Origin: Squalus acanthias
Taxonomy: Eukaryota
Direction: 5' to 3'
NCBI GenBank assembly: GCA_030390025.1
Contig: CM059434.1
Span: forward strand, 131,440,001-131,504,000
Length of the DNA stretch: 64,000 nucleotides
Made by a program: the position numbers and the translations under genes. Positions 11,799-45,940 of this stretch are shown here, piece by piece; positions within the stretch are counted from its first letter, which is position 1, and every line of letters begins with the position of its first letter. The notes under the pieces were generated by a model. That model ran no database searches and had not been told where the DNA came from. It was given only the letters and a program-made list of their open reading frames with translations.

Positions 11799-12129
11799 TT
11801 ACGCAGTGGGAAAGCGGTCTTCCCAGCCCAGTTTGCTTTGCAGTTTCCGAATCTTCTCCTTTATTGTGTCTACCTTTGTCTTTGTGTTTTGATTGGCTAT
11901 ATAGCTCTTGCCTTCTTCAAAGTCCTTCAGTATGGTTTCCAGTAGGACTGTAAGCCACGCCCTATCATACTGTGCTGATTCGCCCATGACCTCTTCAATT
12001 TGTTTATCAACATGATCCAGGAGTTCTTCATCTTCTACAATATAAGTAGTGATCTTCAGACTAGGATGGTGCTCTTTGAGTTGCTGAATATTTCTCTGAC
12101 CACGCTCACCAAATCTGTTTCCACATAAA
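11799..12129 (-). CDS. Coding exon 8: last LRR, C-terminal helical cap and stop
   Basis: Acceptor gttttcag. LCGNRFGERGQRNIQQL...YDRAWLTVLLETILKDFEE...KLGWEDRFPTA*. In frame with ORF 11799..11987. Confidence 0.88.
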
Positions 12130-15100
12130 CTGAAAACGACAAAAGCAATTTAGTTGTGAAAAGCCTTAAACATAGACAAGTCTTTCCGTATTGGCTCTGT
12201 GTTCATTTACTGTCAACATGAAGAGGTGAAGTTACACAGTGGATTATTTAACCAAACTCAGTATATACAGTATGTATATACTGAAATGTTATTTACTTGT
12301 ATAATTCTCTGCATTACTCAGAGCCAATTCCAATTTCTTTTCAGTCTCAATTTTTTGAATTTTCTCTCCTTAGGACTCGTGTGTGTCATTCATGGACATT
12401 GTCAGTCCTGTCCAGTTGGCTCTTCTTAATGTGTGAATTGAGACAGCGAGGTAGGTTTTGTGAGCTTGCTCTCCCAGTATTGAGCCACACTCGAAGGGAG
12501 TGGGGGTCAGAGAAAGAATCACAACATTGTAGCCCTAATTATCTGACCCACGGCCCCTTTGAGTGCAGGTGTAAGCTAGGAGCACACAGCCATGCAGCTC
12601 CACGCTAGGAGCCCACAATTGCAGAATTTAACCTCGTGAGTCTTGGCAAGCTATTTAACCATGGGAGGCATTATAATTGACCCCATGCTGTCCCTGGTCA
12701 ATGTCCACATGTGTATCAAGGAACAACCCAGCATGGAGAGAGTTTGGAGCTGGTGAGCTTCACCTCAGGGAGAGACACCATATCTGGAAACATTTCCAAG
12801 TGCAGAAACCTCCCCAAGTCCTGAAGGTAACCAAACAAAAACCTCAAAGGAATTTCAAGGAAAATTGGGTGCGATGTATATAAAGGGCGGCTGATCCACT
12901 ATTGCCCCTTTTTGGGCCACCACTGCAGTTGGATTTCACCCCCAGTGTCTGCCCATTTTCCATCCCTTTGAAGGAGAGGCCAACTCAAGCTGAGGTGATC
13001 TAAATTAAGCAAAGGTTGTGTAGTCGTGAGTTAAGCTGAAATTATCAACATGAGACAATTGTGATTTCAGTTTAGTTTAATTTCCATCCCAAGTGGCATC
13101 AAGCCAATTCCCTGGGGAAGGAAATGAGCCCTGCTTCCCTTTGGAGATGCACTGGCCTCACACAACTAGCGCATAGCAAGAAAGAGGCTGGAGATAGAGC
13201 GGTAGAAAAAAGAAGACATATTGAGCTGAGGGAGGGAGGGAATATCCGGGAAACAGTACAGAATGGGATGAAAAGAAAAAGGGGACGAAAGGCCGAGGTG
13301 AAAGACAATCAAAGGCACAGAAAGATGATGAGTAAGTAACGAGTGGATTTTAATTATGCAATTCATCACAGGCATTTGTAGGGAGCAAAATCAAAAACTG
13401 GCAACCTAAGGGACAGGATGGTGCAATAGGTTGGACATTGACATTTCATCTCTAGGAGCTCGGTTTAAATCCAACATAAACAACAAACTGATTTCAGACT
13501 TACTGCAGGGTCTCAATGGTTTCATTGTGTGTCAGACACTGACTCATCTTCTCTGTGTCTTCATCAGTGATTTCATTATGGTACAGGTAAAGGGATTTTA
13601 AACTTCTGTTACTTTTGAGTGCTTCGAACAACAGCTGAGCTCCTCTGGATTTAAGGGCATTCGTTCCAATTCTAAAAAGACACAAGAGCAGAACTGTCAT
13701 GGCTTGTACTTTCCTTCAAAATCGATACAATCTTTTTGTTCTTTATTAATAGACGTTACACATTAGAAATACTTACGACAACTTTTCAACAACACAATCT
13801 TTTCCTTTGAGAATGTCACTGAAAACCTTGGCTGATTCCTCGGTCAGCTTGTTTGAGCTTACCCTGCAACAGAGGATGAAGACAATTTGAATGAGGGTTA
13901 AATTAAAATGTTGTATGCTCCAATCTAAGCTAGAGAAGTTTGAGTTTCAGACGTGTATGTTCTGAGGATCTGTAACCTCACAGTTAAGAAAGGCTGTGGT
14001 AAAGAATTCGCTTGGTAAAGAATTTCAGAACCTTGGCGAAACAATGTTTGTATCGCACAATGGACAAACTATCTGCAGAAACACGCAATGGAGGATGCAA
14101 ATCCTCTTCCATAATATTCCAAACTTTCAGGTTTGCAGGAGATGGCCAGGAATGAAAAGCCAATGCAGCACGCACAACCTCATGGTAACTGGTTCTATCC
14201 TCCATCACTCGTTTGATGTTGTTTTCTTCTCAACTACATTATGTCACTGTCCAAACTCCTTGCTGGAATTGGTCTGGCACATCAGACTACTTGGGTTCTT
14301 TTCCATTGTATTTCACCTCCTTTACTATCACCAGAAGCTTTGTTTATTATCTGGTCTTGACCACTGGAGACGCCTCTCTCACTGAAGATCTTCTTTGTGT
14401 TTCTGTACAGCACCTAACACCTTCTCAAACCTCAGCCTGCTGGTACCATCGTCATTTCCTACCAGTCTGCACATCTGACTGTCCGGATCTATGAGCCTGA
14501 TAGCTCTTAAAACATCCAAATGCCATTCTCACTTTGCCCATTTTATACTATAGAGAAACGAAAGGCAACTCCAGCTTGCCCATTGCCACATACCAGTTTG
14601 CAGTTCAGAAGCACCTGTTCACCTCCAGCCATCTCTGGGTCATCTTACTAATCTTTCCTTAAGTTTCTTGACACAACAAGCTGTTGACTTCATACACCAG
14701 GAGAACCCGCACAGTTTGGAATTAGGAAGCAACGTGTGAGCTAATAACATCTCAGAGCATTCAGATAATATGACCATGGGACTGAAACTAGTGATATAGG
14801 CTGATCATAGAATAATACAGCACAGAAGGAGGCCATTTGGCTCACTGTGCCTGTACCAGCTCTTTGAAATAGCTATCCAATTAGTCCCACAATATTCCAG
14901 CTGGGGTCTAACCAGTGATTTATAAAGGTTTGGCATAACTTCTTTCCTTTTGTACTCAATGCCTCTATTTATAAAGGCAAGGGTCCCAAATGCTGCTGCT
15001 TTTTTTTTTAAACAGCCTTCTCAACTTGTCCTGCCAACTTCAAAGATTTGTGTATGTAAACCCCTGGTTTTGGTCTCCTTATCTGAGAAAGGACATACAT

Positions 15101-18100
15101 GCCTTAGAGGCAGTGCACTAGATTGATCCCTGGGATGAGAGGGTTGTCCTATGAGGAGATATTGAGTAGATTGGGCCTATACTCTCTGGAGTTTAGAAGA
15201 ATGAGAGGCGATCTCATTGAAACATAAGATTCTGAGGGGGATTGATAGGGTAGATGCTGAGAGATTGTTTCCCCTGGCTGGAGTGTCTAGAACTAGGGGG
15301 CACAGTCTCAGGATAAGGGGTCGGCCATTTAAGACTGAGATGAGGTGGAATTTCTTCACTCAGAGGGTTGTGAATCTTTGGAATTCTCTGCGGGCTGTGG
15401 ATGCTCGATTGTTGAGTATATTCAAGGCTGAGATAGATAGATCTTTGGACTCTAGGGAAATCAAGAGATATGGGGATCGGGCAGGAAAGTGGAGTTGAGG
15501 TCGATGATCAGCCATGATCTTATTGAATAGCAGAGCAGGCTCGAGGGGCCGTAGAGCCCACTCCTGCTCCTATATATTTTCTTGTGTCTTCCAGCCCTCC
15601 AAAAGCTCTGCGTTCCTCCAACTCTGGCCTCTTGTGCACCCCCAACTTTGCCCCAACATTGACGGCCGTGCCTTCAGCCCTCTAGCCCCAAAGCTCTGCA
15701 ATTCCCTCCCTAAACCTCTCTGCCGCTTCACTTCTCTCACCTCCTTTAAGATGCTGCTTAAAACCTACCTCTTTGACCAAGCTTTTGGTCACCTGTTACA
15801 ATGTCTCCCTCTTTGGTTCTGTTCAATTTTTGTCTGATTATTTTCCAGTGAAGTGCCTTGGGATGTTTTACTACGTTAAAGGTGCTATGTAAATGCAAGT
15901 TATTACTGTAGTTGTTTTTACTCACAAGATATGCTTGCTGCTCCGTAACACCTCCTTGAGCTGTTTAATTCCTTCATCCCCCAAGGCACAGAGTCTTAAA
16001 TCCAATTCTTCCACATTGGAATGACTGAGACAGTAGCATAAAGCAGAGATGTCTAGTGGGCTCAGAGAAATGTTTAAAAGCTCTACACGTTTGATATGAG
16101 GAGATACTTCTGCTGTTACAGTTGGATCATGCAGTTCAAAAAGACAACGCATTAAATTCAGCAACTCTGACGTCTTAATGTCTCGCTCGAGACAGTTTTT
16201 GAACCAGGTCACGAGAGCTCTGGCTGTAGAATGAGTGAGAGGAGCTGTACAGTTCCACAACTTGCCGTCTCTTCCTGCTGTTAAGGAGCCCATGAGAAGC
16301 CTGGTGAAATTGTACAGTTTCTCGGTGTGTTTGGGCTGAAATGGTTGCAGATAAAATTGGCTTTTTTGATTCTGTGGCGTTTTCCCAAAACACCAAAGAT
16401 CCAGACATTTGACCAACTCTTGAGCATCATCATTCAGTGAAGTCGCACAATACAAAGCTGCAAACTGTTCCTTCAGCACAACATGGTAGAACTCAAAGAT
16501 ACTTTGGCCTTTACACTTCTTTTCCAAGATAAGATTTGAGAAATACTTTGAAAGAACTTCTGGGTCTATTTCATAGGCATCCAGATCAGCTTTCTTCATT
16601 TCAAGTGTCCCTGACAGCAGGTTGTTGAAGGACAGTTCCCCCACTTTCAGGACAGTGTCTTGAAGCACTTTGTTTTTCTGGTCAATCTCAGATTTATCAA
16701 TAGCGATCACCATCTCTTCAGATGAATGTGCAGAACAAGGCGAACTGCAGTTAAACAGGCTGTAAAGGAACAGCAAGAACACTTTGCTGTGCGTCAGTGG
16801 CATTTTTGCCAACGCCTCAGGACAGCAGTCCAAAATATTGCACAGGATGTAGCTGTTGAGGGGATTAGAAGCCAGGCAGGTGATGGTCTCATTTTCTGTA
16901 AAGTGTTTATACATTTCTGCTGCCTTTTCCTTTTCCGGATAGAACACTTCACAATATTGTTTCAACTGATCATTGGTAAACCCGGAGATAATAAGGATGC
17001 AATCAAAATACTTCTTGTTAGATTCTGCCTGCTGGCTATTCCATCGGGAGGTAACCAATACCTGTGCTGCTGGAAGGAGATCCCTGGAAATTATTTTGGA
17101 CACAAGAACATTTACTTCAGCCTCAGTGTCCATGTTAAAATCACCGACCGGTGGATCCCATCGCAACTGATGGCTGAATTCATCCAGTCCATCCAAAATG
17201 ATCAGCACATCATGAGGGTTACAGAGAAGTTCCGTTAGGACTGAAGACAGTGGCTCGCAGTGCTTCTTGAGCAGTTTCCGTAGAGTGGTCTTTCCTTCAA
17301 CCCCATTTAAGTCGGAGAATCTGAAAACAATGACACACTTAAACTGCAGCTCATTTGAATTTGATGCCCATTCTTGTTGAATCATATTCACTGCCCAGCT
17401 TTTACCCGCTGCCACATCTCCCACCAGCAAGGTTCGATTTGAGAGGCACTTTTCACTCTGGACCAAAGACAGCAGTTGTGTTGGCTGGATTTCTGTGGCT
17501 TTATCTGATTCTGTGCTTTTGCTGATAGCTTGAATTCTGTTTTCCTTTGGGTACAGAACACTTATACTTCGACTCAGGCTGCTGTAACACCTGGGAATGC
17601 TGCCATTCAATGTTCCTATTTCTTCAGCAGGAATTTTCAAGATGCCATCTTTGTAATGTTGAATGGCAGCTGAAAGCAAAATAGATTTGAAAGTTTATTT
17701 TCCCACAACAACACACTTGTATTTATATAGCGCCTTTAACGTAGTAAAACGTCCCAAGGCGCTTCACAGCACTGTTGTAAAACAACATTTGACACCGAGC
17801 CACATAAGGAGATATTAGGGCAGAAAACTTGGTCAAAGAGGTAGGTTTTAAGGAGCGTCTTAAAGGAGGAAAGAGAGGTAGAGAGGCGGAGAGGTTTAGG
17901 GAGGGAATTCCAGAGCTTAGGGCCTTGGCAGCTGAAGGCACGGCCACCAATTGTGGTGCGATTAAAATCGGGGATGCTCAAGAGGCCAGAATTAGAGGAG
18001 CACAGATATCTCGGGGGGTTGTGGGGCTGGAGGAGATTACAGAGGTAAGGAGGGGCGATGGAGGGATTTGAAAACAAGGATGATAATTTTAAAATCGAGG

Positions 18101-36100: not shown

Positions 36101-39100
36101 AAAACAGTGCCCCCTGGATTATTAAAACTGTGCCCCTGGATTATTAAAACTGTGCCCCTGGATTATTAAAACTGTGCCCCCTGGATTATTAAAACTGTGC
36201 CCCCTGGATTATTAAAACGGTGCCCCCCTGGATTATTAAAACAGTGCCCCCTGGATTATTAAAACAGTGCCCCCTGGATTATTAAAACAGTGCCCCCTGG
36301 ATTATTAAAACTGTGCCCCCTGGATTATTAAAACTGTGCCCCCTGGATTATTAAAACTGTGCCCCCCTGGATTATTAAAACTGTGCCCCCCTGGATTATT
36401 AAAACTGTGCCCCCCTGGATTATTAAAACTGTGCCCCCTGGATTATTAAAACTGTGCCCCTGGATTATTAAAACTGTGCCCCCCTGGATTATTAAAACAG
36501 TGCCCCCTGGATTATTAAAACTGTGCCCCCTGGATTATTAAAACTGTGCCCCCTGGATTATTAAAACTGTGCCCCCTGGATTATTAAAACTGTGCCCCCT
36601 GGATTATTAAAACTGTGCCCCCTGTATTATTAAAACTGTGCCCCCTGGATTATTAAAATTGTGCCCCCTGGATTATTAAAACTGTGCCCCTGGATTATTA
36701 AAACAGTGCCCCCTGGATTATTAAAACAGTGCCCCCTGGATTATTAAAACTGTGCCCCCTGGATTATTAAAACGGTGCCCCCTGGATTATTAAAACTGTG
36801 CCCCCTGGATTATTAAAACAGTGCCCCCTGGATTATTAAAACAGTGCCCCCTGGATTATTAAAACAGTGCCCCCTGGATTATTAAAACTGTGCCCCCTGG
36901 ATTATTAAAACAGTGCCCCCTGGATTTTTAAAACTGTGCCCCCTGGATTATTAAAACTGTGCCCCCCTGGATTATTAAAACTGTGCCCCCTGGATTATTA
37001 AAACAGTGCCCCCTGGATTATTAAAACTGTGCCCCCCTGGATTATTAAAACTGTGCCCCCTGGATTATTAAAACTGTGCCCCCCTGGATTATTAAAACTG
37101 TGCCCCCTGGATTATTAAAACTGTGCCCCCTGGATTATTAAAACTGTGCCCCCCTGGATTATTAAAACTGTGCCCCCTGGATTATTAAAACTGTGCCCCC
37201 TGGATTATTAAAACTGTGCCCCCTGGATTATTAAAACTGTGCCCCCCCTGGATTATTAAAACTGTGCCCCCTGGATTATTAAAACTGTGCCCCCTGGATT
37301 ATTAAAACTGTGCCCCCTGGATTATTAAAACTGTGCCACCTGGATTATTAAAACTGTGCCCCCTGGATTATTAAAACTGTGCCCCCCCTGGATTATTAAA
37401 ACTGTGCCCCCTGGATTATTAAAACTGTGCCCCCTGGATTATTAAAACTGTGCCCCCTGGATTATTAAAACTGTGCCCCCTGGATTATTAAAACTGTGCC
37501 CCCTGGATTATTAAAACGGTGCCCCCCTGGATTATTAAAACTGTGCCCCCTGGATTATTAAAACTGTGCCCCCTGGATTATTAAAACTGTGCCCCCCTGG
37601 ATTATTAAAACTGTGCCCCCTGGATTATTAAAACTGTGCCCCCTGGATTATTAAAACGGTGTCCACTGGATTATTAAAACGGTGTCCACTGGATTATTAA
37701 AACTGTGCCCCCTGGATTATTAAAACACTGCCCCCTGGATTATTAAAACGGTGCCCCCCTGGATTATGAAAACTGTGCCCCCTGGATTATTAAAACAGTG
37801 CCCCCTGGATTATTAAAATACTGCCCCCTGGATTATTAAAACTGTGCCCCCTGGATTATTAAAACTGTGCCCCCTGGATTATTAAAACACTGCCCCTGGA
37901 TTATTAAAACTGTGCCCCCTGGATTATTAAAACTGTGCCCCCTGGATTATTAAAACTGTGCCCCCTGGATTATTAAAACTGTGCCCCCTGGATTATTAAA
38001 ACTGTGCCCCCTGGATTATTAAAACTGTGCCCCCTGGATTATTAAAACGGTGCCCCCTGGATTATTAAAACTGTGCCCCCTGGATTATTAAAACGGTGCC
38101 CCCTGGATTATTAAAACTGTGCCCCCTGGATTATTAAAACTGTGCCCCCTGGATTATTAAAACGGTGCCCCCTGGATTATTAAAACGGTGCCCCCTGGAT
38201 TATTAAAACGGTGCCCCCTGGATTATTAAAACGGTGCCCCCTGGATTATTAAAACTGTGCCCCCTGGATTATTAAAACTGTGCCCCCTGGATTATTAAAA
38301 CAGTGCCCGCTGGATTATTAAAACAGTGCCCCCCTGGATTATTAAAACTGTGCCCCCCTGGATTATGAAAACTGTGCCCCTGGATTATTAAAACTGTGCC
38401 CCTGGATTATTAAAACTGTGCCCCCTGGATTATTAAAACTGTGCCCCCTGGATTATTAAAACTGTGCCCCCTGGATTATTAAAACAGTGCCCCCTGGATT
38501 ATTAAAACTGTGCCCCCCTGGATTATTAAAACTGTGCCCCCTGGATTATTAAAACTGTGCCCCCTGGATTATTAAAACTGTGCCCCCTGGATTATTAAAA
38601 CTGTGCCCCCCCTGGATTATTAAAACTGTGCCCCCTGGATTATTAAAACTGTGCCCCCCTGGATTATTAAAACTGTGCCCCCCTGGATTATTAAAACTGT
38701 GCCCCCCTGGATTATTAAAACTGTGCCCCCCCCTGGATTATTAAAACTGTGCCCCCTGGATTATTAAAACTGTGCCCCCCCCCTGGATTATTAAAACTGT
38801 GCCCCCCTGGATTATTAAAACTGTGCCCCCTGGATTATTAAAACGGTGCCCCCCTGGATTATTAAAACTGTGCCCCCCCCTGGATTATTAAAACTGTGCC
38901 CCCCCCCTGGATTATTAAAACTGTGCCCCCCTGGATTATTAAAACTGTGCCCCCTGGATTATTAAAACGGTGCCCCCCTGGATTATTAAAACTGTGCCCC
39001 CCCCTGGATTATTAAAACTGTGACCCCTGGATTATTAAAACTGTGCCCCCTGGATTATTAAAACTGTGCCCCCCCCTGGATTATTAAAACTGTGCCCCCC

Positions 39101-42100
39101 CCCTGGATTATTAAAACTGTGCCCCCTGGATTATTAAAACTGTGCCCCCTGGATTATTAAAACTGTGCCCCCCTGGATTATTAAAACACTGCCCCCTGGA
39201 TTATTAAAACTGTGCCCCCTGGATTATTAAAACTGTGCCCCCTGGATTATTAAAACTGTGCCCCCTGGATTATTAAAACTGTGCCCCCTGGATTATTAAA
39301 ACTGTGCCCCCTGGATTATTAAAACTGTGCCCCCTGGATTATTAAAACTGTGCCCCCTGGATTATTAAAACTGTGCCCCCTGGATTATTAAAACTGTGCC
39401 CCCTGGATTATTAAAACGGTGCCCCCTGGATTATTAAAACTGTGCCCCCTGGATTATTAAAACTGTGCCCCCTGGATTATTAAAACTGTGCCCCCTGGAT
39501 TATTAAAACTGTGCCCCCTGGATTATTAAAACAGTGCCCCCCTGGATTATTAAAACTGTGCCCTCTGGATTATTAAAACTGTGCCCCCCTGGATTATGAA
39601 AACTGTGCCCCCTGGATTATTAAACTGTGCCCCCTGGATTATTAAAACTGTGCCCCCTGGATTATTAAAACTGTGCCCCCCTGGATTATTAAAACTGTGC
39701 CCCCCTGGATTATTAAAACTGTGCCCCCTGGATTATTAAAACTGTGCCCCCTGGATTATTAAAACTGTGCCCCCCTGGATTATTAAAACTGGGGCCCCCT
39801 GGATTATTAAAACGGTGCCCCCCTGGATTATTAAAACACTGCCCCCTGGATTATTAAAACTGTGCCCCCTGGATTATTAAAACGGTGCCCCCCTGGATTA
39901 TTAAAACACTGCCCCCTGGATTATTAAAACTGTGCCCCCTGGATTATTAAAACACTGCCCCCTGGATTATTAAAACAGTGACCCCTGGATTATTAAAACA
40001 GTGCCCCCTGGATTATTAAAACTGTGCCCCCTGGATTATTAAAACGGTGCCCCCTGGATTATTAAAACGGTGCCCCCCCCTGGATTATGTGACCCTTTCC
40101 ATTTCAAGGAGGAACCAAAGGGATGAAAGGAAATGCTAAAGACCAACGTGTTTACTTTAAACTAATTTTCCTGATGGGAGAGGCCAGCTATTTTCCCCAA
40201 ATGCCTGTACATTCTACACCTTGGCCGGGATCTTACCCGAAGAGGCGTGTTGGGGGCGGGACTGCTGGTTTCCGGGTTCTAGTCCCGCCCCCAGTGACGT
40301 CTGACGACCTGACGCTAGTTTCCCCTGATTGGCCTTGTTAAGCCCGCCCTGCGGGCATGCCGGCCAATTAAGGGAAAGCCGCTGTCAGATGACGTCAGTG
40401 CAGGACGCTTCATCTGCCGGTTTTGTTAAAGTGACAGGCACCATAATTTTTTGACAGATGAATTGTCAGTGTTTGACAGCATTGAGGTGCTGTCAAACAC
40501 TGACAATCACTGTCGAAAGGTGAGCCCTTGTACCCAGACTCTCCAATGACTCTCTCCTTAGGAGAAAACAGATGGCAGCTGCATGTGAGATTGCAGAAGC
40601 CATCTGTCAATTCTCCTGATCAGATGAGGCTTCACAGAAACATCAAATCTTGTCACCTGCAGATACATATAAACAGAATAAAAATATTTCTCACTACATT
40701 CTCTCCTGTGTCATACTTACCTGTGCATCATTGCACCCTTCACACTACCTCTGCAGCTGTCATTTGCACAGTTACACTGCGGCAGACCTACAGCTCGCCT
40801 CGCTGACCCTGGCGGGGTTTCCCACCGTCGGGAAGGCCGCATCAGCAGGCGGAAAATGGGGAAAAGCCTCTTAACCACCTGTTAACAGGCAGTTAATTGG
40901 CTCTAATCCCCTCCTGCCTCTAGGAGACGGGTCCCTGCGCGAGTCGGGGACCCACCTCCCAGGAAGATGGTTCGGAGGGTGGTTGGGAGCGGGGTTGGCA
41001 CCCGCTCCCAATTTTTCCCATTTTCCCAGCAGACCCGCCTCATCAGGGAAGGTAAAATCCAGCCCCTAGTGTCTGTTTCTTGGTTCTATGCTCATGCTAA
41101 ATTATGGGGACAGTTATATTGGTTTAGTTTTCTATTATTCAGCATGCAATACCTATACAGAGAGTGACCATAGATGAATGTGCCACCTCCAGTATGTCTC
41201 TGACAATAGCTTACAACCTCGGGCCTTGACGCCCACCCCCCCCAGCCTTGTGACCCCTGACCCACCCTCCACTTAACTACACCTCTGCTTCTGATTGAGT
41301 GCTTTCCTCCAAGTGACTGCTCTTCATGGTAGGTACCTAGGTCACCACTGAATTGTTAAGGAGCATATGAATCCTTTACAAGCAGTTAAACTTATTACTA
41401 TCTATATACAGTTCATACTGAGTTATACTCAGTTACGTGGAGAGACGAGAGAAGATCAGATTGTTCTCCTTAGAACAGAGAAGGTTAAGGGGAGATTTAA
41501 TAGAGGTATTCAAAATATGAGGGGTTTCGAGAGAGTAAATGGGGAAAAACTATTTCCACTGGCAGGAGGGTCAGTAAGCAGAGGCCACAGATTGAAGGTA
41601 ATTGGCAAAAGAACCAGAGGGGAGATCAGATGAGAAGAATTTTTTTTTTACCCAGCGAGTTGTTATGATCTGGAATGCACTGCGTGAAAGGGCGGTGGAA
41701 GCAGATTCAACAGTAACTTTCAAAAAGGAATTGGATAAATACTTGAAGGGGAAAAATTGGCAGGGCTATGGGGAAAGGGCAGGGGAGTGGGACTATTTGT
41801 AATAGCCCTTTCATAGAGCCGGCACAGGCACGATGGGCTGAACGGCCTCCTTCTGCGGTGCATCATTCTATGATTGAATTCTCAAAACTTTAATTCAGGC
41901 GAGTTTGACGTTAAGATATTAACAACTGGTCTTACTCCATTACGAACCGCTCCTTAGACTACACTTGTGATTAACACATGGGGACATCAGAGCCTGGGTT
42001 TCGTTTTTTGCTGACAGTTGCAAAGCAAAACAAAAACTGTTTATCAATAATTTATTTATTTTCTTCAGTCAGAAGGCTGAAAATTCAGTTAAAAAGTCTC

Positions 42101-45100
42101 TTCACTTTTAGGGCTTAAGATTATTGTTTTATATAAAAATTCAGATACTCCATAAATGTTGACATTTTGAGCATTTTATGAGGTAACTTGCCTTTGCTCA
42201 TGTTCATTAAAGACTGATTAAAGTCAGCAACCTCAAACGCTTTAAGACAGGAACCAGCTGATGATGAGGATATCAGTGGGGGGAGGATGCCTGATGGTGT
42301 GAAAGAGACAATGCCTTGTTGGAGAAAGAGGCAGGAACGCGATGGGGTGGGTTCCAAAAGGATCTAAGGGCAGTTTGGGTCCAATTCTCCTGGGCCCCAC
42401 TCCCACAAGGTTGTCAGATCCTTACTGCTCGATACTCCCAGATCCCAAAAACATCCAAATCTCCCTCACCTCTTCCACGGTCCTGTTGGATCCAGCCAAT
42501 CGCCCCCCCCTACACCTTGCAGGATTCCTCCTCCCAGACCTGGGACTTCCTGTCAGTGCTCGCAAACCTGCAGAATGCATTCCAGTGCTCCCTGATCCAG
42601 GACCACCTCACTGCTCCTAAACCCTGGAACCTCGTTTCCCAATACACTCACATCTCAGGACCTCTCCTCCAGTTAACCCAGATCCCAGCACCTGCCTCAG
42701 TATTCCCAGAAGCCTGGGATACCTCCCAGTGCCATGACCCTAGGACCTGACTCAAAAATCTGCTAGACTCAGAGACCCCATCCCATCCCAGTATTGCCAG
42801 ACCTCAAACTCCCTTCCTAGTCACCCATTCATATCACAGGCGACCCCAAATGCCAATAAGAACATATGAACAGGAGTAGGCCTTTCAGCCTCTCAAACCC
42901 ACAGCATCCACAGCCTTTTGGGGGAACGAGTTCCAGATTTTCACTATTCTTTATGTGCAAAAGTGTGGAAAAGGTATTTCCTGATTTCACTCCTAAATGG
43001 CCTGGCTTTAATGTTAAGATGATGCTCTCTTGTTCTGGATTTCCCCACCAGAGGAAATAGTTTCTCTGTATCTACCCTATTGAATCCCTTCATCATTTAT
43101 ATACCTCGATTGCATCGACCCTCAACTTCTAAACTCAAGGGAATAATAAAATCAGTGTCTCTGATCATGCTGCTTGGCACCACACCTCTTGTTATAAAGC
43201 AGCCCCTTATTCTAAGACTATGTCCCCTAGTTCTCGTCTCACCCATCATCGGGAACATCCTCCCCGCATCCACCCGATCCAACCCCTTCACAATCTTATA
43301 TGTTTCAATAAGATCGCCTCTCATTCTTCTGAACTCCAATGAGTAGAGTCCCAATCTACCCAACCTCTCCTCATATGACCACCCCCTCATCCCCGGGATT
43401 AACCGAGTGAACCTTTTTTGCACTGCCTCGAGAGCAAGGATGTCTTTCCTTAAGTAAGGACACCAAAACTGTATGCAGTATTCCAGGTGCGGTCTCACCA
43501 ATACCTTGTACAACTGAAGCAATACCTCCCTATTTTTATATTCTATCCCCCTAGCAATGAAAGCCAACATTCCATTTGCCTTCTTAATCACTTGCTGCAC
43601 CTGCATACTAACCTTTTGAGTTTCGTGCACCAGGACCCCCAGATCCCTTTGCACTTCAGTACTCTCCAGTTTCTTGCCATTAAGATAATAAATTGCTCTA
43701 GGATTTTTCCTGCCAAAGTGCATCACCTCACACTTTCCAGTGTTGTATTCCATCTGCCAAATCTCTGCCCACTTACTTAGCCTGTCTATGTCCCCTTGCA
43801 GGTTTTTTATGTCCTCCTCACTCACTACTTTCCCTCCCATCTTTGTATCATCTGCAAATTTTGATATGTTACACTTGGTCCCTTCCTCCAAATCGTTAAT
43901 ATAGATTGTGAAGAGTTGGGGACCCAGCACTGACCCCTGTGGAACACCACTAGTTACTGATTGCCAGTCTGAGAATGAACCATTTATCCCAACTCTTTGC
44001 TTTCTGTTAGATAGCCAATCCTCTATCCATGCCAGAATATTACCCCCAATCCTGTGATTTTTTACCTTAAGCAATAATCTTTTGTGTGGCACCTTGTCAA
44101 ATGCCTTTTGGAAGTCTAAATACACTACGTCCACTGGTTCCCCTTTATCCACTCTATATGTTACTTCCTCAAAGAACTCCAGCAAATTTGTCAAACATGA
44201 CTTCCCCTTCGTAAAACCATACTGACTTTGTCCTATTAAATTATGATTATCCAAATGTCCTGTTACTGTTTCCTTAATAATGGACTCCAAAATTTTACCT
44301 ACCACAGATGTTAGGCTAACCGGTCTATAGTTACCAGCCTTCTGTCTACTGCCCTTTTTAAATAAGGGTGTTACATTAGCAGTTTTCCAGTCTGCCGGGA
44401 CCTTAGCGGAATCCAGGGAGTTTTGAAAAATTATTACCAATGCATCTACAATCCCTACCGCCACTTCCTTCAAGACTCTAGGATGTAAGCCATCAGGTCC
44501 AGGTGATTTATCCGCCTTGAGTCCCATTATTTTACCGAGTACCACTTCCTTAGTGATTTTGATCGTGTTTAACTCCTCTCCCCCTATAGCCCCCTGTTTG
44601 TCCAGTGTTGGGATATTCTTAGTGTCCTCTACTGTAAAGACTGATACAAAATATTCATTCAGTGTTTTTGCCATCTCCATATTTCCCACCATTAATTTCC
44701 CGGTCTCATCCTCTAAGGGACCAACATTTACTTTAGCCACCCTTTTTCTTTTTATATAACTATAAAAACTCTTACTATCTGTTTTTATATTTTTTGCTAA
44801 TTTACTTTCATAATCTATCTTCCCTTTCTTAATCAATCTTTTTGTTATTTTTTGCTGCCTTTTTAAGTTTTCCCAATCCTCTGTCCTCCCACTAGATTTC
44901 GCTACCTTATATGCCCTTGTTTTTAGTCGAATACTATCCTTAATTTCTTTACTTAGCCACGGATGACTGTCCTTTCTTTTACACCCTTTTCTTTTCAGTG
45001 GAATATATATTTTTTGGAAGTTGTAAAATAACTCCTTGAATGTACACCACTGATCATGTGTCGTCTTACCCTTTAATCTATTTTCCCAATCCACTCTACT

Positions 45101-45940
45101 CAATTCCGCTCGCATACCTTCATAGTCTCCTTTATTCAAGCTTAGCACGCTTGTTTGAGATCCAACCTTCTCACCCTCTAATTGAATATGGAATTCAACC
45201 ATGTTATGGTCACTCATTCCAAGGGGATCCTTTACTAGGACATTTTTAATTAATCCTGTCTCGTTACACAGGACCAGATCTAAGGTTGCTTGCCCCCTGG
45301 TCGGTTCAGTTACATACTGCTCAAGAAACCCATCCCTAATACACTCAATGAACTCATCCTCAAGGCAGCCCTGCCCCATTTGATTTGTCCAATTAATATG
45401 ATAGTTAAAATCCCCCATAATTATAGATGTTCCCTTATTACATGCCTCAACTATTTCCTGATTGATACTCCGTCCAATAGAGTTGCAACTGTTCGGAGGC
45501 CGATAGACTACGCCCACTAATGTTTTTTTCCCCTTATTATTCCTTATCTCCACCCAAACTGTTTCATTATCATGATTTTTTGACCCAATATCATTACTCT
45601 GTATTACAGTGATTCCTTCCTTTATTAACATAGCCACCCCACCTCCCCTTCCTTCCTGCCTGTCCTTCCTGATCGTTAAATAACCTGGTATGTTTAATTT
45701 CCAACTTACCAGAAGTAACACCAGAGGAAATCTGCTGGTACAAGTTTAATTTTAAAGACACACACTCGAAGGATTTGTAAATTATTTTATAAGGAAAATC
45801 AACTGACTTGAGGACTTAAAGAAGCAGAGATCAGACTCTGCACAGACATAAAGCTCCCGAGTAAAGAGATTACACTTACCAAGCACAGGGTATTGGAATA
45901 TTAGGATAGCAAATCGGATTGAGTATTTCAGAGACTCCAT
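11799..45940 (-). CDS. Spliced gene, 8 coding exons, predicted 977-aa type I membrane protein: signal peptide-IgV-TM-NACHT-LRR-helical C-cap (Ig-NLR hybrid)
   Basis: Exons 45880-45940, 29173-29520, 26665-26823, 25571-25606, 15926-17669, 13777-13863, 13504-13671, 11799-12129. All introns are GT-AG with phases 1,1,1,1,2,2,2. Lengths sum to 2934 nt, an open frame from ATG to TAA. Confidence 0.85.
13504..13671 (-). CDS. Coding exon 7: two RI-type LRRs (168 nt)
   Basis: IGTNALKSRGAQLLFEALKSNRSLKSLYLYHNEITDEDTEKMSQCLTHNETIETL. Bounded by ctttttag and gtaagt, phase 2-2. Confidence 0.92.
13777..13863 (-). CDS. Coding exon 6: one LRR (87 nt)
   Basis: VSSNKLTEESAKVFSDILKGKDCVVEKL. Bounded by ctgttgcag and gtaagt, phase 2-2. 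Confidence 0.9.
14805..15580. mobile_element. Two CR1 3' fragments in opposite orientation (minus 14805-15065, plus 15065-15580)
   Basis: ILRGIDRVDAERLFPLAGVSRTRGHSLRIRG, plus CR1 3' tails. Confidence 0.75.
15590..15900 (+). mobile_element. L2 LINE 3' end
   Basis: GRAFSPLAPKLCNSLP..FKMLLKTYLF; tail ggtgctatgtaaatgcaagt. Confidence 0.75.
15926..17669 (-). CDS. Coding exon 5: NACHT NTPase (NBD-HD1-WHD-HD2) and first LRRs
   Basis: Walker A GDVAAGKS, Walker B LIILDGLDEF, sensor-1 VLVTSR, WHD FEFYHVVLKEQFAALY, LRR VEELDLRLCALGDEG. Phase-1 acceptor ttttgctttcag is in frame; donor gtgagt. Confidence 0.95.
17705..18327 (-). mobile_element. L2 LINE 3' fragment
   Basis: TLIHAFVISRLDYSNAL..QNSAARVLT; GGRAFSCQGPKLWNSLP. 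Confidence 0.85.
20385..20422 (-). ncRNA. Inverted copy of the Penelope hammerhead (1-nt deletion in stem II)
   Basis: Minus strand reads cttacCTGAGGAaggagcgacagctcGAAAgcttgtaa. Confidence 0.55.
20708..22078 (+). CDS. Penelope RT plus GIY-YIG endonuclease (N-truncated)
   Basis: MDVSALYTNIP, TAMGTKFAP, RYIDDIF, NVVYLIRC..WYIGET..LRQRMNGHR, GLNRD. Confidence 0.9.
   Translation: MDVSALYTNIPHNDGIAATASVLNTNNSQSPDAILQLIRFILDHNVFTFDNHFFTQTHRTAMGTKFAPQYANIFMHKFEQDFFAAQDLQPTLYTRYIDDIFFLWTHGEGSLKGLHDSINRFHPTIKLTMDYSSESVSFLDTRISIKDGCLSTSLYRKPTDNLTMLHFSSFHPNHVKEAIPYGQALRIHRICSDEEERDGHLRTLKDALVRTGYDARLVDRQFRRATAKNRIDLLRRRTRDTTNRVPYVVQYFPGAEKLRHVLRSLQHVIDDDEHLAKAIPTPPLLAFKQPPNLKSTIVRSRLPIFQENSNQDTTQPCHGKLCKTCQIMDTDTISTREDTTHQVHGTYSCDSANVVYLIRCSKGCSRAWYIGETMQTLRQRMNGHRATIARQEGSLPVGEHFSSQGHSASDLRVSILQGGLRDTRQRKIIEQKLIAKFRTHEDGLNRDIGFMSRYRT
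22298..22338 (+). ncRNA. Minimal hammerhead ribozyme in the Penelope terminal repeat
   Basis: ttac-CTGAGGA-a-ggagc-gaca-gctcc-GAAA-gc-TT-gtaa. Confidence 0.7.
22850..23460 (+). mobile_element. CR1 3' fragment
   Basis: ERVQRRFTGMLPGMRDFSYVERLEKLELFSLEQRR; ttctatga tail. Confidence 0.8.
25030..25515 (-). mobile_element. CR1 3' fragment
   Basis: FSLEQRSLRGDLLEVFKIMKG. Confidence 0.75.
25571..25606 (-). CDS. Coding exon 4: 36-nt cytoplasmic microexon (K)TPLLSTDALLQ
   Basis: Acceptor ttttttttctctag, donor CAAG|gtaatg, phase 1-1, no stop codon. Confidence 0.75.
26665..26823 (-). CDS. Coding exon 3: stalk, transmembrane helix and basic stop-transfer
   Basis: ISVLIICVVLVGAVATGIGIW followed by KIKNRK. 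159-nt phase 1-1 exon bounded by cttcag and gtaagt. Confidence 0.88.
27950..28783. mobile_element. Non-autonomous DNA transposon (MITE), probably PIF/Harbinger
   Basis: TIRs gggctgggttttgtca ... tgacaaaatccagccc; aaa/taa flanks. Confidence 0.65.
29173..29520 (-). CDS. Coding exon 2: Ig V-set domain, B7/butyrophilin-like
   Basis: GEDVLLLATF..LVVNWQ..VVHSFY..YQDPAFRGRTELF..GNATLKLKGVTASDTGSYTCYV. 348-nt phase 1-1 exon bounded by ttctttag and gtgagc. Confidence 0.92.
30061..40088. repeat. ~10-kb minisatellite, 23-bp unit TGGATTATTAAAACTGTGCCCCC (~430 copies)
   Basis: Uninterrupted tandem array. Variation is in C-run length (4-9) and ACTGT/ACAGT/ACGGT/ACACT variants. Confidence 0.98.
40220..41066. 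mobile_element. MITE of the same family as 27950-28783, opposite orientation
   Basis: Ends in aaaatccagccc. 40870-40910 is the reverse complement of about 28108-28146. The left end is degenerate. Confidence 0.6.
41440..41875 (+). mobile_element. CR1 3' fragment
   Basis: FFTQRVVMIWNAL..FKKELDKYL..GYGERAGEWD. Confidence 0.8.
43195..45702 (-). mobile_element. CR1 LINE ORF2 (partial EN plus RT), open frame, truncated at both ends
   Basis: 874-aa ORF with GGGVAM, GVVYRPP, MGDFNY, SDHN, PGPDG and KFADDTK. Confidence 0.93.
45880..45940 (-). CDS. Coding exon 1: signal peptide MESLKYSIRFAILIFQYPVL(G)
   Basis: ATG at 45940. Phase-1 donor CTTG|gtaagt. An upstream acceptor (ttgatttacag) starts the exon at 45954. 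Hydrophobic leader continues GTAA-FS in the next exon. Confidence 0.75.

What the first reader, a model, noticed from the sequence alone, without database searches (positions are those of the whole stretch)
11799..45940. Membrane-anchored Ig-NLR hybrid receptor: signal peptide-IgV-TM-NACHT-LRR in one open 977-aa frame
Seen: eight minus-strand exons with canonical splice sites and matching phases join a leader, a B7/butyrophilin-like IgV, a TM helix with KIKNRK stop-transfer, an intact NACHT and LRRs, with no stop. Known: vertebrate NLRs (NOD1/2, NLRC, NLRP, NAIP, NLRX1) are non-transmembrane proteins with CARD, PYD, BIR or a mitochondrial leader at the N-terminus, and B7/BTN tails are short or B30.2. 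Inference: an exon-shuffled receptor that couples a luminal or extracellular Ig domain to a cytosolic STAND ATPase. It could signal outside-in (ligand clusters the NACHTs) or inside-out (cytosolic sensing re-clusters the IgV for lymphocytes, as BTN3A1 does through B30.2). I cannot check whether this architecture has already been described.
Basis: partly seen in the sequence, partly recalled or inferred. Interest (0 to 1): 0.95.

Follow-up and report, generated by a model that had tools for sequence, protein, structure and literature searches.

The report
Membrane-anchored Ig-NLR receptor gene
A cartilaginous-fish gene, confirmed here by spliced transcripts, joins an outward-facing B7-like antibody-type domain and a membrane anchor to an NLR-type intracellular immune switch, a design shared by many non-mammalian vertebrates that I could not find described for any vertebrate.

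Summary
Confirmed. The eight minus-strand exons (45940 down to 11799) are real. All borders are GT-AG and the phases match. They sum to 2,934 nt, which is 977 codons plus a stop.

Spliced contigs in 4 of 4 transcript-like public runs join IgV, TM and the 36-nt microexon, then run on into the first 30 letters of the NACHT exon. In 3 of 4 runs a contig also runs from the IgV exon into the leader exon. A Pristiophorus japonicus protein model of 976 aa has the same parts in the same order.

The design is not a one-off. V-set + TM + NACHT + LRR proteins form one strongly supported NLR clade covering sharks, rays, chimaera, gar, lungfish and amphibians. Incomplete models of the family come from coelacanth, turtle and alligator.

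The IgV is B7-H3-like and as conserved as the ATPase core. A [DE]xxxL[LI] motif follows the TM helix. No death-fold effector is present.

Ten literature searches found no vertebrate description; a sea-cucumber Ig-TM-NACHT receptor is in print. Topology and function remain inferred.

The parts
45880..45940 (-). Exon 1: start codon and leader (MESLKYSIRFAILIFQYPVL + first base of a split codon), 61 nt, phase 0>1
   Evidence: ATG in an AAGATGG context with a GTAAGT donor. It is 90% identical to the leader of P0020. The loose end of the IgV-exon contigs matches 45881-45910 exactly in 3 of 4 runs.
29173..29520 (-). Exon 2: single V-set Ig domain, 348 nt, phase 1>1. It keeps the W, the NAT sequon and the DxGxYxC motif. 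The first Ig cysteine is replaced by Ala.
   Evidence: Pfam V-set 2.4e-10. PDB best match is CD276 at 1.6e-26. The joint 29173>26823 is present in 4 of 4 runs.
26665..26823 (-). Exon 3: short stalk, hydrophobic helix ISVLIICVVLVGAVATGIGIW, basic KIKNRK stop-transfer, 159 nt, phase 1>1
   Evidence: Translation. Joints on both sides are present in 4 of 4 runs. An equivalent hydrophobic 19-mer (Kyte-Doolittle 1.68-3.35) is present in 15 of 15 chondrichthyan relatives.
25571..25606 (-). Exon 4: 36-nt microexon, phase 1>1. Together with the last codons of exon 3 it spells E-K-T-P-L-L, a [DE]xxxL[LI] type motif.
   Evidence: Flanked by ctctag|...|gtaatg. The joint 26665>25606 has the full 36 letters on the short side in 3 of 4 runs and 28 in the fourth. 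The motif is present in 14 of 15 chondrichthyan relatives.
15926..17669 (-). Exon 5: pre-NACHT segment, NACHT (GDVAAGKS, LIILDGLDEF, VTSRWN), winged-helix His, HD2 and the first LRR. 1744 nt, phase 1>2.
   Evidence: Pfam NACHT 4.3e-21 and NLRC4_HD2 3.4e-12. It is 86% identical to P0020. The loose end at 25571 equals 17640-17669.
13777..13863 (-). Exon 6: one LRR, 87 nt, phase 2>2
   Evidence: Borders. 93% identical to P0020. No reads were laid here.
13504..13671 (-). Exon 7: two LRRs, 168 nt, phase 2>2
   Evidence: Borders. Weak LRR_6 match, E 0.00077, below the curated cutoff. 71% identical to P0020. No reads were laid here.
11799..12129 (-). Exon 8: last LRR, about 90-aa helical-looking C-terminal tail and TAA stop. 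331 nt, phase 2>0.
   Evidence: Borders. 78% identical to P0020. No significant PDB match; NLRX1 scores E 1.2.
30061..40077 (.). Intron 1 content: 10-kb satellite of a 23-bp unit, about 432 copies
43097..45721 (-). Intron 1 content: retroelement ORF of 874 aa with a reverse-transcriptase-like sequence, on the same strand as the gene
   Evidence: ORF list. The identification is from reading the translation; no family search was run.

Best explanation
**What it is.** The window holds one expressed gene for a single-pass type I membrane NLR.

**Shown:**
- The eight exons are spliced into one mRNA, giving leader, B7-H3-like IgV, TM helix, microexon, NACHT-HD-LRR and a C-terminal tail.
- The same architecture defines one old NLR clade of jawed vertebrates.
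- The ATPase motifs are intact.
- No CARD, PYD or other death-fold domain is present.

**Inferred:**
- The leader is cleaved, so the glycosylated IgV faces the outside or an endosomal lumen.
- The basic KIKNRK stretch keeps NACHT-LRR in the cytosol.
- The conserved E-x-x-x-L-L signal just after the helix recruits clathrin adaptors, so the protein cycles between the surface and endolysosomes.

**Most likely mechanism (my commitment, about 0.35-0.4 for the direction).** As in other NLRs, the LRR/NACHT part is the sensor and nucleotide-driven switch, and the N-terminal module is the output by induced proximity. Here that output lies across the membrane. Cytosolic activation would oligomerise the NACHT and so cluster the TM helices and the B7-like IgV, which a conserved partner on another cell or in the lumen would read. 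This is the logic of BTN3A1 with an NLR in place of B30.2.

**Confidence by step:** single gene and transcript about 0.95; type I topology about 0.8; direction of signalling about 0.35-0.4.
For: **Gene and transcript**
- Canonical borders and matching phases sum to 977 codons.
- Spliced contigs in 4 of 4 runs bridge IgV>TM>microexon>NACHT, and in 3 of 4 bridge leader>IgV.
- A skate-like public contig of 3,341 nt encodes a 982-aa V-set+NACHT protein (P0009). A 3,675-nt contig encodes a 1,008-aa one (P0209). Both are too short to contain introns.

**Family**
- 13 of the 15 chondrichthyan hits carry V-set plus NACHT.
- 25 of 25 aligned members have V-set, NACHT and HD2, and 23 of 25 have LRR_6.
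- A 37-row clade with SH-aLRT 100 holds 26 of the 28 IgV-bearing rows plus the window.

**Topology**
- A hydrophobic 19-mer followed by a K/R cluster is present in 15 of 15 chondrichthyan and 12 of 13 bony-vertebrate clade members examined.
- The GN[AV][ST] sequon is invariant at G99-N100.

**Sorting motif**
- [DE]xxxL[LIM] occurs within 45 residues after the helix (offsets 8-15) in 14 of 15 chondrichthyan and 7 of 13 bony-vertebrate members.
- The chance expectation is about 0.05 per 20-aa window, or roughly 0.14 over the 45 aa actually scanned by my arithmetic from the rate.

**Switch**
- Walker A G-K, Walker B D-G-D and the winged-helix His are invariant in 25 sequences.
- The profile matches NOD2 at 4.6e-73 and NLRP3 at 7.4e-61.

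**Direction**
- No cytosolic effector domain appears among the 25 families shown, of 26 found.
- The IgV belongs to the B7 group of cell-cell ligands.
- The IgV is as conserved as the ATPase between cartilaginous and bony vertebrates: 40% against 36% for NACHT and 28% for the helical domains. That fits a conserved endogenous partner better than a fast-changing microbial ligand.
Against:
- The runs are only guessed to be RNA. I infer RNA from intron-less contigs and from 11-16 of 30 bins without any depth.
- The only published Ig-TM-NACHT receptor, sea-cucumber AjNLRC4, is reported to work outside-in: its Ig binds microbes and the intracellular part engages actin (PMC8699970 abstract). That favours the rival direction.
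- An endocytic motif also suits an uptake receptor.
- This copy, its Pristiophorus orthologue and one Amblyraja protein lack the first Ig cysteine, so this paralogue's IgV may be altered or weakened.
- Database isoforms without the IgV (P0001) or without the TM exon (P0008) exist as predictions.
- The closest orthologue, P0020, has EKTPFL, which does not fit the motif.
Confidence: 0.45

Rival explanations
1. Outside-in receptor. The IgV binds a microbial or host ligand at the surface or in a phagosome or endosome. Clustering brings the cytosolic NACHT modules together, and they signal or drive uptake.
For: The published echinoderm precedent, AjNLRC4, has an extracellular Ig that binds microbes and an intracellular part that acts on actin (PMC8699970 abstract; PMC13133943 passages). 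Echinoderm NACHT+V-set clusters are the nearest look-alikes by language-model features, at 0.92 and 0.90 (a lead only). The conserved dileucine-type motif fits ligand-driven internalisation.
Against: There is no cytosolic output domain among the 25 families shown, of 26 found. In known NLRs the LRR side senses and the N-terminus is the output (established knowledge). The IgV is conserved like a housekeeping core, at 40% between classes, which is unlike most pathogen-binding Ig receptors. Homology with the echinoderm proteins was not tested.
Confidence: 0.28
2. Hard-wired membrane tether. The TM helix and sorting motif only place a regulatory, NLRC3- or NLRX1-like NLR on a particular membrane. 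The IgV serves folding, trafficking or homophilic contacts rather than signalling.
For: The NACHT-LRR has no effector domain, like the regulatory NLRs. By predicted structure, NLRX1, NLRC3-like and NOD2 clusters are all similar, with TM-scores of 0.60-0.62. Membrane attachment is a general need of NOD1/2 and NLRP3 (recalled knowledge). Predicted isoforms lack the IgV (P0001).
Against: The IgV is at least as conserved as the NACHT over the whole family and keeps the V-set hallmarks and its sequon. That is more constraint than a passive spacer would need.
Confidence: 0.17
3. This particular copy is a decaying paralogue. It is transcribed, but its IgV no longer folds or binds because the canonical disulfide is lost.
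For: The window has LLLATF where most of the 16 database proteins aligned have LLPCTF. The IgV exon is 75% identical to the orthologue against 86% for NACHT. Pristiophorus holds a second paralogue with the cysteine (P0002).
Against: The frame is open over all 977 codons. The IgV aligns to the orthologue over 115 of 115 residues without gaps. The Pristiophorus orthologue also lacks this cysteine, though with Ser where the window has Ala, so the frame appears to have stayed open since the loss. The exon is spliced into the mRNA in 4 of 4 runs. Ig domains without the disulfide are known (recalled).
Confidence: 0.08
4. Two neighbouring genes, a B7-like gene and an NLR, are joined only by read-through or assembly chimeras.
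For: A contig across two genes does not by itself prove one transcript (the tool's own caveat). The IgV exon is split over two contigs that overlap by 30 letters.
Against: One contig per run covers IgV(131 nt)-TM-microexon-NACHT(>=255 nt) in 4 of 4 runs. All four 5' junctions are phase 1. There is no stop and no alternative start in frame. The same order is found in 25 of 25 aligned relatives from chimaera to frogs and in two intron-less public contigs (P0009, P0209).
Confidence: 0.02

Closest known systems
NOD2 / NLRP3-type NLRs (NACHT-WHD-HD2-LRR STAND ATPases)
   Same: NACHT with Walker A/B, the winged-helix His, HD2 and C-terminal LRRs. The profile matches rabbit NOD2 (5irl) at 4.6e-73 and NLRP3 at 7.4e-61. 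The NLRP3 alignment starts in the segment before its NACHT.
   Different: There is no CARD or PYD. The N-terminus is a leader, an IgV and a TM helix. The LRR region is short, about five repeats. The exon alone is only distantly related to any solved NLR; the best is NLRP9 at 5.9e-16. It forms its own clade.
B7-H3 (CD276), B7-H4 (VTCN1) and butyrophilins
   Same: A V-set domain closest to CD276 (1.6e-26 for the exon, 5.5e-41 for the family profile), then VTCN1, MOG, BTN3A1 and PD-L1. By structure, VTCN1, CD276 and HHLA2 clusters are nearest. It is a type I single-pass layout with a phase 1-1 Ig exon.
   Different: There is no IgC domain and no B30.2. The tail is an 800-aa NACHT-LRR. This copy lacks the first Ig cysteine.
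BTN3A1 inside-out signalling (recalled knowledge, not from a call)
   Same: A cytosolic sensor domain joined through one TM helix to a B7-like ectodomain. This is a model for how cytosolic sensing could be shown at the surface.
   Different: The sensor here is a STAND ATPase that oligomerises, not a B30.2 pocket. No partner receptor is known and nothing has been tested.
Sea-cucumber AjNLRC4 / AjNLR-new (PMC8699970 abstract; PMC13133943 passages)
   Same: Ig + TM + NACHT in one membrane protein. Echinoderm NACHT+V-set clusters are the nearest by features (0.92 and 0.90).
   Different: The echinoderm proteins are reported with two TM segments and without LRRs. One of them is reported to have the NACHT outside. 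Common descent with the vertebrate clade was neither shown nor excluded here.
Anthozoan membrane-bound NLRs (PMC3879445 passage)
   Same: An NLR with predicted N-terminal transmembrane segments.
   Different: They have three to four TM segments of a gap-junction-like domain, no Ig domain, and occur in cnidarians only.
NLRX1
   Same: An NLR without a death-fold domain, targeted to a membrane-bounded compartment. The overall predicted fold is similar, with TM-scores of 0.61-0.62.
   Different: It has a mitochondrial leader rather than a secretory leader plus TM. NLRX1_C is not among the 25 families shown for the 25 members. The last exon scores E 1.2 against 3un9, and the profile match to 3un9 stops in the LRR.

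Membership tests
NLR (NACHT-LRR) family | NACHT NTPase with Walker A, Walker B and sensor residues | tested here: met
   Pfam NACHT 4.3e-21. GDVAAGKS, LIILDGLDEF and VTSRWN are read in the exon. G292-K293 and D363-G364-D366 are invariant in 25 sequences.
NLR (NACHT-LRR) family | Winged-helix and helical domains after the NACHT | tested here: met
   NLRC4_HD2 3.4e-12. NOD2_WH scores 0.00068, below the cut-off. HD2 is found in 25 of 25 relatives and NOD2_WH in 10 of 25. H596 is invariant.
NLR (NACHT-LRR) family | C-terminal leucine-rich repeats | tested here: met
   LRR_6 matches in exons 5 and 7 are below the cut-off singly. LRR_6 is found in 23 of 25 relatives. The profile aligns to ribonuclease inhibitor and NLRX1 LRRs at 1e-31 to 1e-35.
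NLR (NACHT-LRR) family | N-terminal death-fold or BIR effector domain (CARD, PYD, BIR) | tested here: not met
   None appears in the window exons. None appears among the 25 families shown, of 26 found, for 25 relatives. This feature is usual but not obligatory; NLRX1 also lacks one.
B7 / butyrophilin family | Membrane-distal IgV of the B7 type | tested here: met
   CD276 1.6e-26, VTCN1 7.6e-16, BTN3A1 4.2e-09, PD-L1 4.6e-09.
B7 / butyrophilin family | Canonical intradomain disulfide (two cysteines) | tested here: not met
   The first cysteine is Ala in the window. The second (YTC) is present. The first Cys is kept in at least 90% of 25 relatives.
B7 / butyrophilin family | Membrane-proximal IgC domain | tested here: not met
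   RNA contigs join the IgV exon directly to the TM exon. No C-set family appears among the 25 families shown for the 25 relatives.
B7 / butyrophilin family | Short tail or B30.2 (PRY/SPRY) tail | tested here: not met
   The tail is NACHT-LRR. No SPRY appears among the families shown.
Type I single-pass membrane protein | Cleavable signal peptide | not testable with these tools
   Only a crude reading: a basic n-region (K5, R9), the hydrophobic stretch FAILIFQYPVL, and V-L-G before the split codon. No signal-peptide predictor was available.
Type I single-pass membrane protein | One hydrophobic helix of about 20 residues followed by basic residues | tested here: met
   ISVLIICVVLVGAVATGIGIW followed by KIKNRK. 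Kyte-Doolittle 19-mers score 1.68-3.35 in 15 of 15 chondrichthyan relatives. This is a hydropathy scan only, not a topology predictor.
Echinoderm Ig-TM-NACHT receptors (AjNLRC4 type) | Shared descent of the Ig-NACHT fusion | not tested
   No echinoderm sequence was in hand. Atlas feature scores of 0.92 and 0.90 are leads only. The profile search did not reach any.
NLRX1-like C-terminal domain | NLRX1_C helical domain after the LRR | tested here: inconclusive
   The last exon against 3un9 scores E 1.2. The profile match to 3un9 ends at profile position 889, inside the LRR. NLRX1_C is not among the 25 families shown. Predicted-structure alignment to NLRX1 clusters reaches residue 964-966 of 976.
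FISNA-NACHT NLRs (NLRP3, fish NLR-C) | FISNA domain before the NACHT | tested here: inconclusive
   Pfam FISNA is not among the 25 families shown, but profile alignments to NLRP3 start at profile position 188-206, before the NACHT.

The most novel reading that the evidence does not exclude
Jawed vertebrates ancestrally possessed, and most non-mammalian lineages still possess, a transmembrane NLR that reports cytosolic danger across the membrane. NACHT oligomerisation would cluster a B7-H3-like IgV that lymphocytes or other cells read, giving a direct link from NLR sensing to B7-type cell-cell signalling. The fusion may be older still and shared with the echinoderm Ig-TM-NACHT receptors. Its apparent absence from the mammalian hits would then be a lineage loss.
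Probability: 0.25. Interest if true: 0.95.

Novelty: new variant of a known kind. Interest (0 to 1): 0.8.

Why it matters
Textbook vertebrate NLRs are soluble cytosolic sensors with CARD, PYD or BIR outputs. Here an intact NLR switch is wired by a TM helix to a B7-type ectodomain, the transcript is confirmed, and the design is conserved from chimaera to amphibians, with partial models in turtle and alligator.

It gives three things:
1. A natural test case for whether NLR oligomerisation can signal across a membrane, in either direction.
2. A possible evolutionary link between innate NLR sensing and the B7/butyrophilin cell-cell ligands. The closest solved IgV is B7-H3, whose receptor is still unknown as far as I recall.
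3. A family that automatic annotation hides under misleading names (NLRC3-like, NLRP1 homolog, NOD1-like), so NLR censuses of fishes and amphibians probably misfile it.

Tractable species carry it (axolotl, Pleurodeles, spotted gar), so the question can be tested directly.

Tried and rejected
**Second copy in the window.** Looked for a second NLR or Ig gene in the rest of the window and found only repeat and retroelement ORFs.

The last exon gives nothing significant in PDB; NLRX1 scores E 1.2. The family profile's match to 3un9 ends in the LRR. NLRX1_C is not among the 25 families shown. Left as inconclusive.

**FISNA.** Not found by Pfam. Only a profile alignment to the pre-NACHT part of NLRP3 exists.

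**Teleost members.** The Fundulus and Cololabis IgV hits lie in a different, FISNA-type clade and have no TM-like stretch. I did not count them as family members; they may be gene-model fusions.

**Reaching echinoderm or jawless relatives.** The last profile search returned only 58 proteins, none clearly echinoderm, so the common-descent question stays open.

**Tissue or expression level.** Not obtainable. Run identities are coded and contig depth is not a level.

**Literature.** None returned a vertebrate Ig-TM-NLR.
- Passages seen: PMC8455134, 10.1101/022061, PMC11258412, PMC12436146, PMC13133943, PMC3879445.
- Abstract and outline seen: PMC8699970.
- Everything else: search listings only.
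- Subscription journals are not covered. Supplementary file 12 of PMC8455134 (the 43 whale-shark NLRs) and Supplementary Figure 5 of the zebrafish NLR paper (elephant-shark NLR families) may list members of this family without describing them.

**Joined protein.** The joined 977-aa protein of the window was never built, typed or searched. Every search used single exons by reference, and the database orthologue P0020 served as the full-length proxy.

Full report
**1. Is it there?**

The minus strand between 45940 and 11799 holds eight open segments whose borders I read base by base. A script tabulated them; two of its offsets were wrong and I corrected them.

The exons are E1 45940-45880, E2 29520-29173, E3 26823-26665, E4 25606-25571, E5 17669-15926, E6 13863-13777, E7 13671-13504 and E8 12129-11799. 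Every intron starts GT and ends AG. E1 to E5 are joined in phase 1 and E5 to E8 in phase 2. The start codon is the first ATG after an in-frame stop and sits in an AAGATGG context.

Pfam finds NACHT (4.3e-21) and NLRC4_HD2 (3.4e-12) in E5 and V-set (2.4e-10) in E2. NOD2_WH and LRR_6 in E5, and LRR_6 in E7, fall below their curated cut-offs.

**2. Is it one transcript?**

The NACHT exon is held at 0.88-0.95 of its sampled words by eight small contig sets (34-161 million letters) from coded organisms A and B. The tool only guesses these to be RNA. I laid four of them, from three studies, on 25500-29600.
- In 4 of 4 runs one contig of 692-711 nt covers the last 131 nt of the IgV exon and skips 2,349 nt with CT..AC ends (GT..AG on the gene's strand).
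- It then covers the whole 159-nt TM exon, skips 1,058 nt, and covers the microexon (36 letters in three runs, 28 in one).
- It runs on for at least 255 more letters.
- The first 30 of those letters are an exact and unique match to 17640-17669, the first bases of the NACHT exon (0 of 100 shuffles gave a match). That string is the one shown for X1, X4 and X11; the X3 string overlaps it and was read by eye.
- In 3 of 4 runs a second contig runs from the IgV exon's acceptor into letters that match 45881-45910, the end of the leader exon. In the fourth run the contig stops inside the exon.

Between the exons, 11-16 of the 30 bins have no depth at all, and the covered intronic bins are repeats. These sets are therefore transcriptomes, not genomic DNA.

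Two limits remain.

**3. Relatives**

The NACHT exon finds 19 proteins. The best 15 are all chondrichthyan at 54-84% identity, and 13 of them carry V-set plus NACHT in one model. The species include Pristiophorus, Heterodontus, Mustelus, Scyliorhinus, Pristis, Chiloscyllium, Stegostoma, Narcine, Hypanus, Mobula, Hemitrygon, Callorhinchus and a skate. Of the other two, one is an IgV-less isoform, and the other has the IgV by my own phmmer check.

Isoform X1 of the closest one (P0020, Pristiophorus japonicus, 976 aa) has the same leader (SLKYSIRFAILIFQYP), IgV, TM, microexon, NACHT, LRRs and tail. Per-exon identities to the window are 90, 75, 71, 56, 86, 93, 71 and 78%.

P0009 is a public contig of 3,341 nt that encodes 982 aa, and P0209 is one of 3,675 nt that encodes 1,008 aa, both with V-set and NACHT. 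Contigs that short cannot hold introns, so they are independent transcript-level evidence in a skate-like and a newt-like organism.

**4. How far does the family reach?**

An exhaustive HMMER search collapses the chondrichthyan proteins into one representative and shows a second tier at 31-39% identity. Pfam finds V-set plus NACHT in 5 of 10 of those.

The sources name them as follows:
- spotted and alligator gar;
- Pleurodeles, Ambystoma and Lissotriton;
- frogs: Discoglossus, Hyperolius, Mantella, Pelodytes, Pelobates, Pyxicephalus, Ranitomeya, Engystomops, Ascaphus, Bombina and Dendrobates;
- the caecilian Rhinatrema, the lungfish Protopterus and Latimeria;
- Alligator and the turtle Chelydra (partial models).

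No mammal or bird, and no squamate with a V-set domain, appeared in these lists. That is an absence of hits, not proof of loss.

In a maximum-likelihood tree of 99 NACHT regions (quick search, LG+G4), a clade of 37 rows with SH-aLRT 100 on a long stem (0.66) holds 26 of the 28 IgV-bearing rows plus the window. It splits into a chondrichthyan half (18 rows, support 100) and a bony-vertebrate half (19 rows, support 94). Of the 10 rows in the clade without an IgV hit, 7 are models that begin inside or at the NACHT-exon equivalent (coordinates; P0016), so their N-termini are simply missing.

The two IgV hits outside the clade (Fundulus, Cololabis) sit among FISNA-type fish NLRs and have no TM-like stretch. 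I treat them as a separate matter. The sister group is unresolved (support 30).

**5. Anatomy and what it implies**

*IgV.* The IgV exon is closest to CD276/B7-H3 (1.6e-26), then VTCN1, MOG, BTN3A1 and PD-L1. The family profile gives CD276 at 5.5e-41. The Atlas's own model of P0020 residues 1-205 aligns best with VTCN1, CD276, HHLA2 and MOG clusters.

In a 25-sequence alignment, the Trp, the G-N of the N-glycosylation sequon, D-x-G-x-Y-x-C, the Walker A G-K, the Walker B D-G-x-D and a His in the winged-helix region are invariant.

*Membrane anchor.* A hydrophobic 19-mer followed by a K/R cluster lies between the IgV and the NACHT. It is present in 15 of 15 chondrichthyan proteins and 12 of the 13 bony-vertebrate proteins I examined with an IgV hit that I count in the family (Pelodytes is the miss).

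*Sorting motif.* Within 45 residues after the helix (offsets 8-15), 14 of 15 chondrichthyan proteins (the miss is P0020, EKTPFL) and 7 of 13 bony-vertebrate proteins have [DE]xxxL[LIM]. In the window it is E-K-T-P-L-L, created across the E3/E4 junction. The motif's background rate in these proteins is 0.0037 per position, or about 0.05 for a 20-residue window; by my own arithmetic that is roughly 0.14 over the 45 residues actually scanned. From established cell biology this is the acidic-dileucine signal read by clathrin adaptors. I infer cycling between the surface and endolysosomes; nothing here tests it.

*No effector domain.* No CARD, PYD, B30.2, TIR or FISNA appears among the 25 families shown, of 26 found, for the 25 members.

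*NLR core.* The profile matches NOD2 (4.6e-73) and NLRP3 (7.4e-61). The NLRP3 alignment starts before the NACHT, so the juxtamembrane segment may be FISNA-like. This is inconclusive.

**6. A constraint that bears on mechanism**

Mean pairwise identity between cartilaginous and bony vertebrates is 40% in the IgV, 36% in the NACHT, 28% in the helical domains, 44% in the LRRs and 17% in the stalk plus TM. The ectodomain is thus at least as constrained as the ATPase core. I read this as a conserved partner rather than a fast-changing microbial ligand.

Three points lead me to commit to inside-out coupling as the most likely mechanism, at roughly 0.35-0.4:
- the lack of any cytosolic output domain;
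- the general NLR rule that the N-terminal module is the output;
- the B7 identity of the IgV.

Outside-in sensing is at about 0.28. It is favoured by the published echinoderm precedent and by the endocytic motif. A plain membrane tether is at about 0.17.

The gene and transcript claim itself is near certain.

**7. This copy's peculiarity**

The window and its Pristiophorus orthologue replace the first Ig cysteine (A and S respectively; most relatives have LLPCTF), as does one Amblyraja protein. The frame is open, the exon aligns without gaps, and it is spliced in. I therefore give the decaying-copy reading only about 0.08, but it needs a codon-level test.

**8. Known or new?**

The protein models are public under automatic names such as NLRC3-like, NLRP1 homolog, NOD1-like and NLRC5-like. 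Ten full-text searches found no paper that describes a vertebrate NLR with an Ig ectodomain and a TM helix.

What the papers I opened say:
- The whale-shark genome paper counts 43 NLRs and mentions a novel NLRP-related family. In the passages I saw it does not link V-set or TM to NLRs.
- A zebrafish NLR paper notes 'other NLR gene families' in elephant shark only in a supplement.
- A bird inflammasome survey and a 2025 fish NLR review have nothing on it.

Supplements were not opened and subscription journals are not covered, so a prior mention cannot be excluded.

Precedents exist outside vertebrates:
- Sea-cucumber AjNLRC4 and AjNLR-new are Ig + TM + NACHT with no LRR and two TM segments (PMC8699970 abstract; PMC13133943 passages).
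- Anthozoan NLRs have three to four TM segments (PMC3879445 passage).
- Echinoderm NACHT+V-set clusters are also the nearest by language-model features (0.92 and 0.90), which is a lead to shared ancestry and not evidence for it.

I therefore rate it a new variant of a known kind: an undescribed, anciently conserved, membrane-anchored branch of the NLR family.

**9. Verdict**

Interest is 0.8.

Noticed in passing
window 30061-40077: Intron 1 holds a 10-kb satellite of a 23-bp unit (about 432 copies, 95% matches). It separates the leader exon from the IgV exon by more than 16 kb together with a LINE.
   Followed up: partly
window 43097-45721 (-), 18576-20129 (+), 20708-22078 (+): Long retroelement ORFs of 874, 517 and 456 aa with reverse-transcriptase-like sequence lie in introns 1 and 4. 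The 874-aa one is on the gene's own strand. No family search was run.
   Followed up: no
window 1253-3439 (-): A GC-rich (about 65%) 728-aa ORF with a CxxC...H...C zinc-knuckle-like stretch, probably a retroelement gag-like protein.
   Followed up: no
window exons 5-8 compared with P0002, P0004 and P0020: Mosaic kinship. The window's LRR and tail exons are closer to Mustelus P0004 (86/78/64%) than to Pristiophorus paralogue A, P0002 (50/57/52%), while its NACHT exon is closer to P0002 (78%) than to P0004 (72%). This suggests two old 3'-end types, with gene conversion or recombination between paralogues.
   Followed up: partly
P0001, P0008 (database isoforms): There are predicted isoforms without the IgV (P0001 starts in the intron before the TM exon) or without the TM exon (P0008). 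The four runs showed no depth just upstream of the TM exon's acceptor at 26870-27006.
   Followed up: partly
P0105 (Alligator mississippiensis, 480 aa): This is a partial V-set+TM+NACHT model. Its P-loop reads GNTAKIIS rather than G-x-x-x-x-G-K-S/T, which may mean a degenerate ATPase or a pseudogene in crocodilians.
   Followed up: no
P0125 (Fundulus), P0143 (Cololabis): These are teleost FISNA-type NLR models with N-terminal Ig hits but no TM-like stretch. They lie outside the Ig-TM-NLR clade and may be an independent fusion or merged gene models.
   Followed up: partly
window 27418-27554 and 28240-28787: Intronic stretches have very high summed contig depth (up to about 2,100) in all four runs. 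They are most likely dispersed repeats transcribed elsewhere.
   Followed up: no
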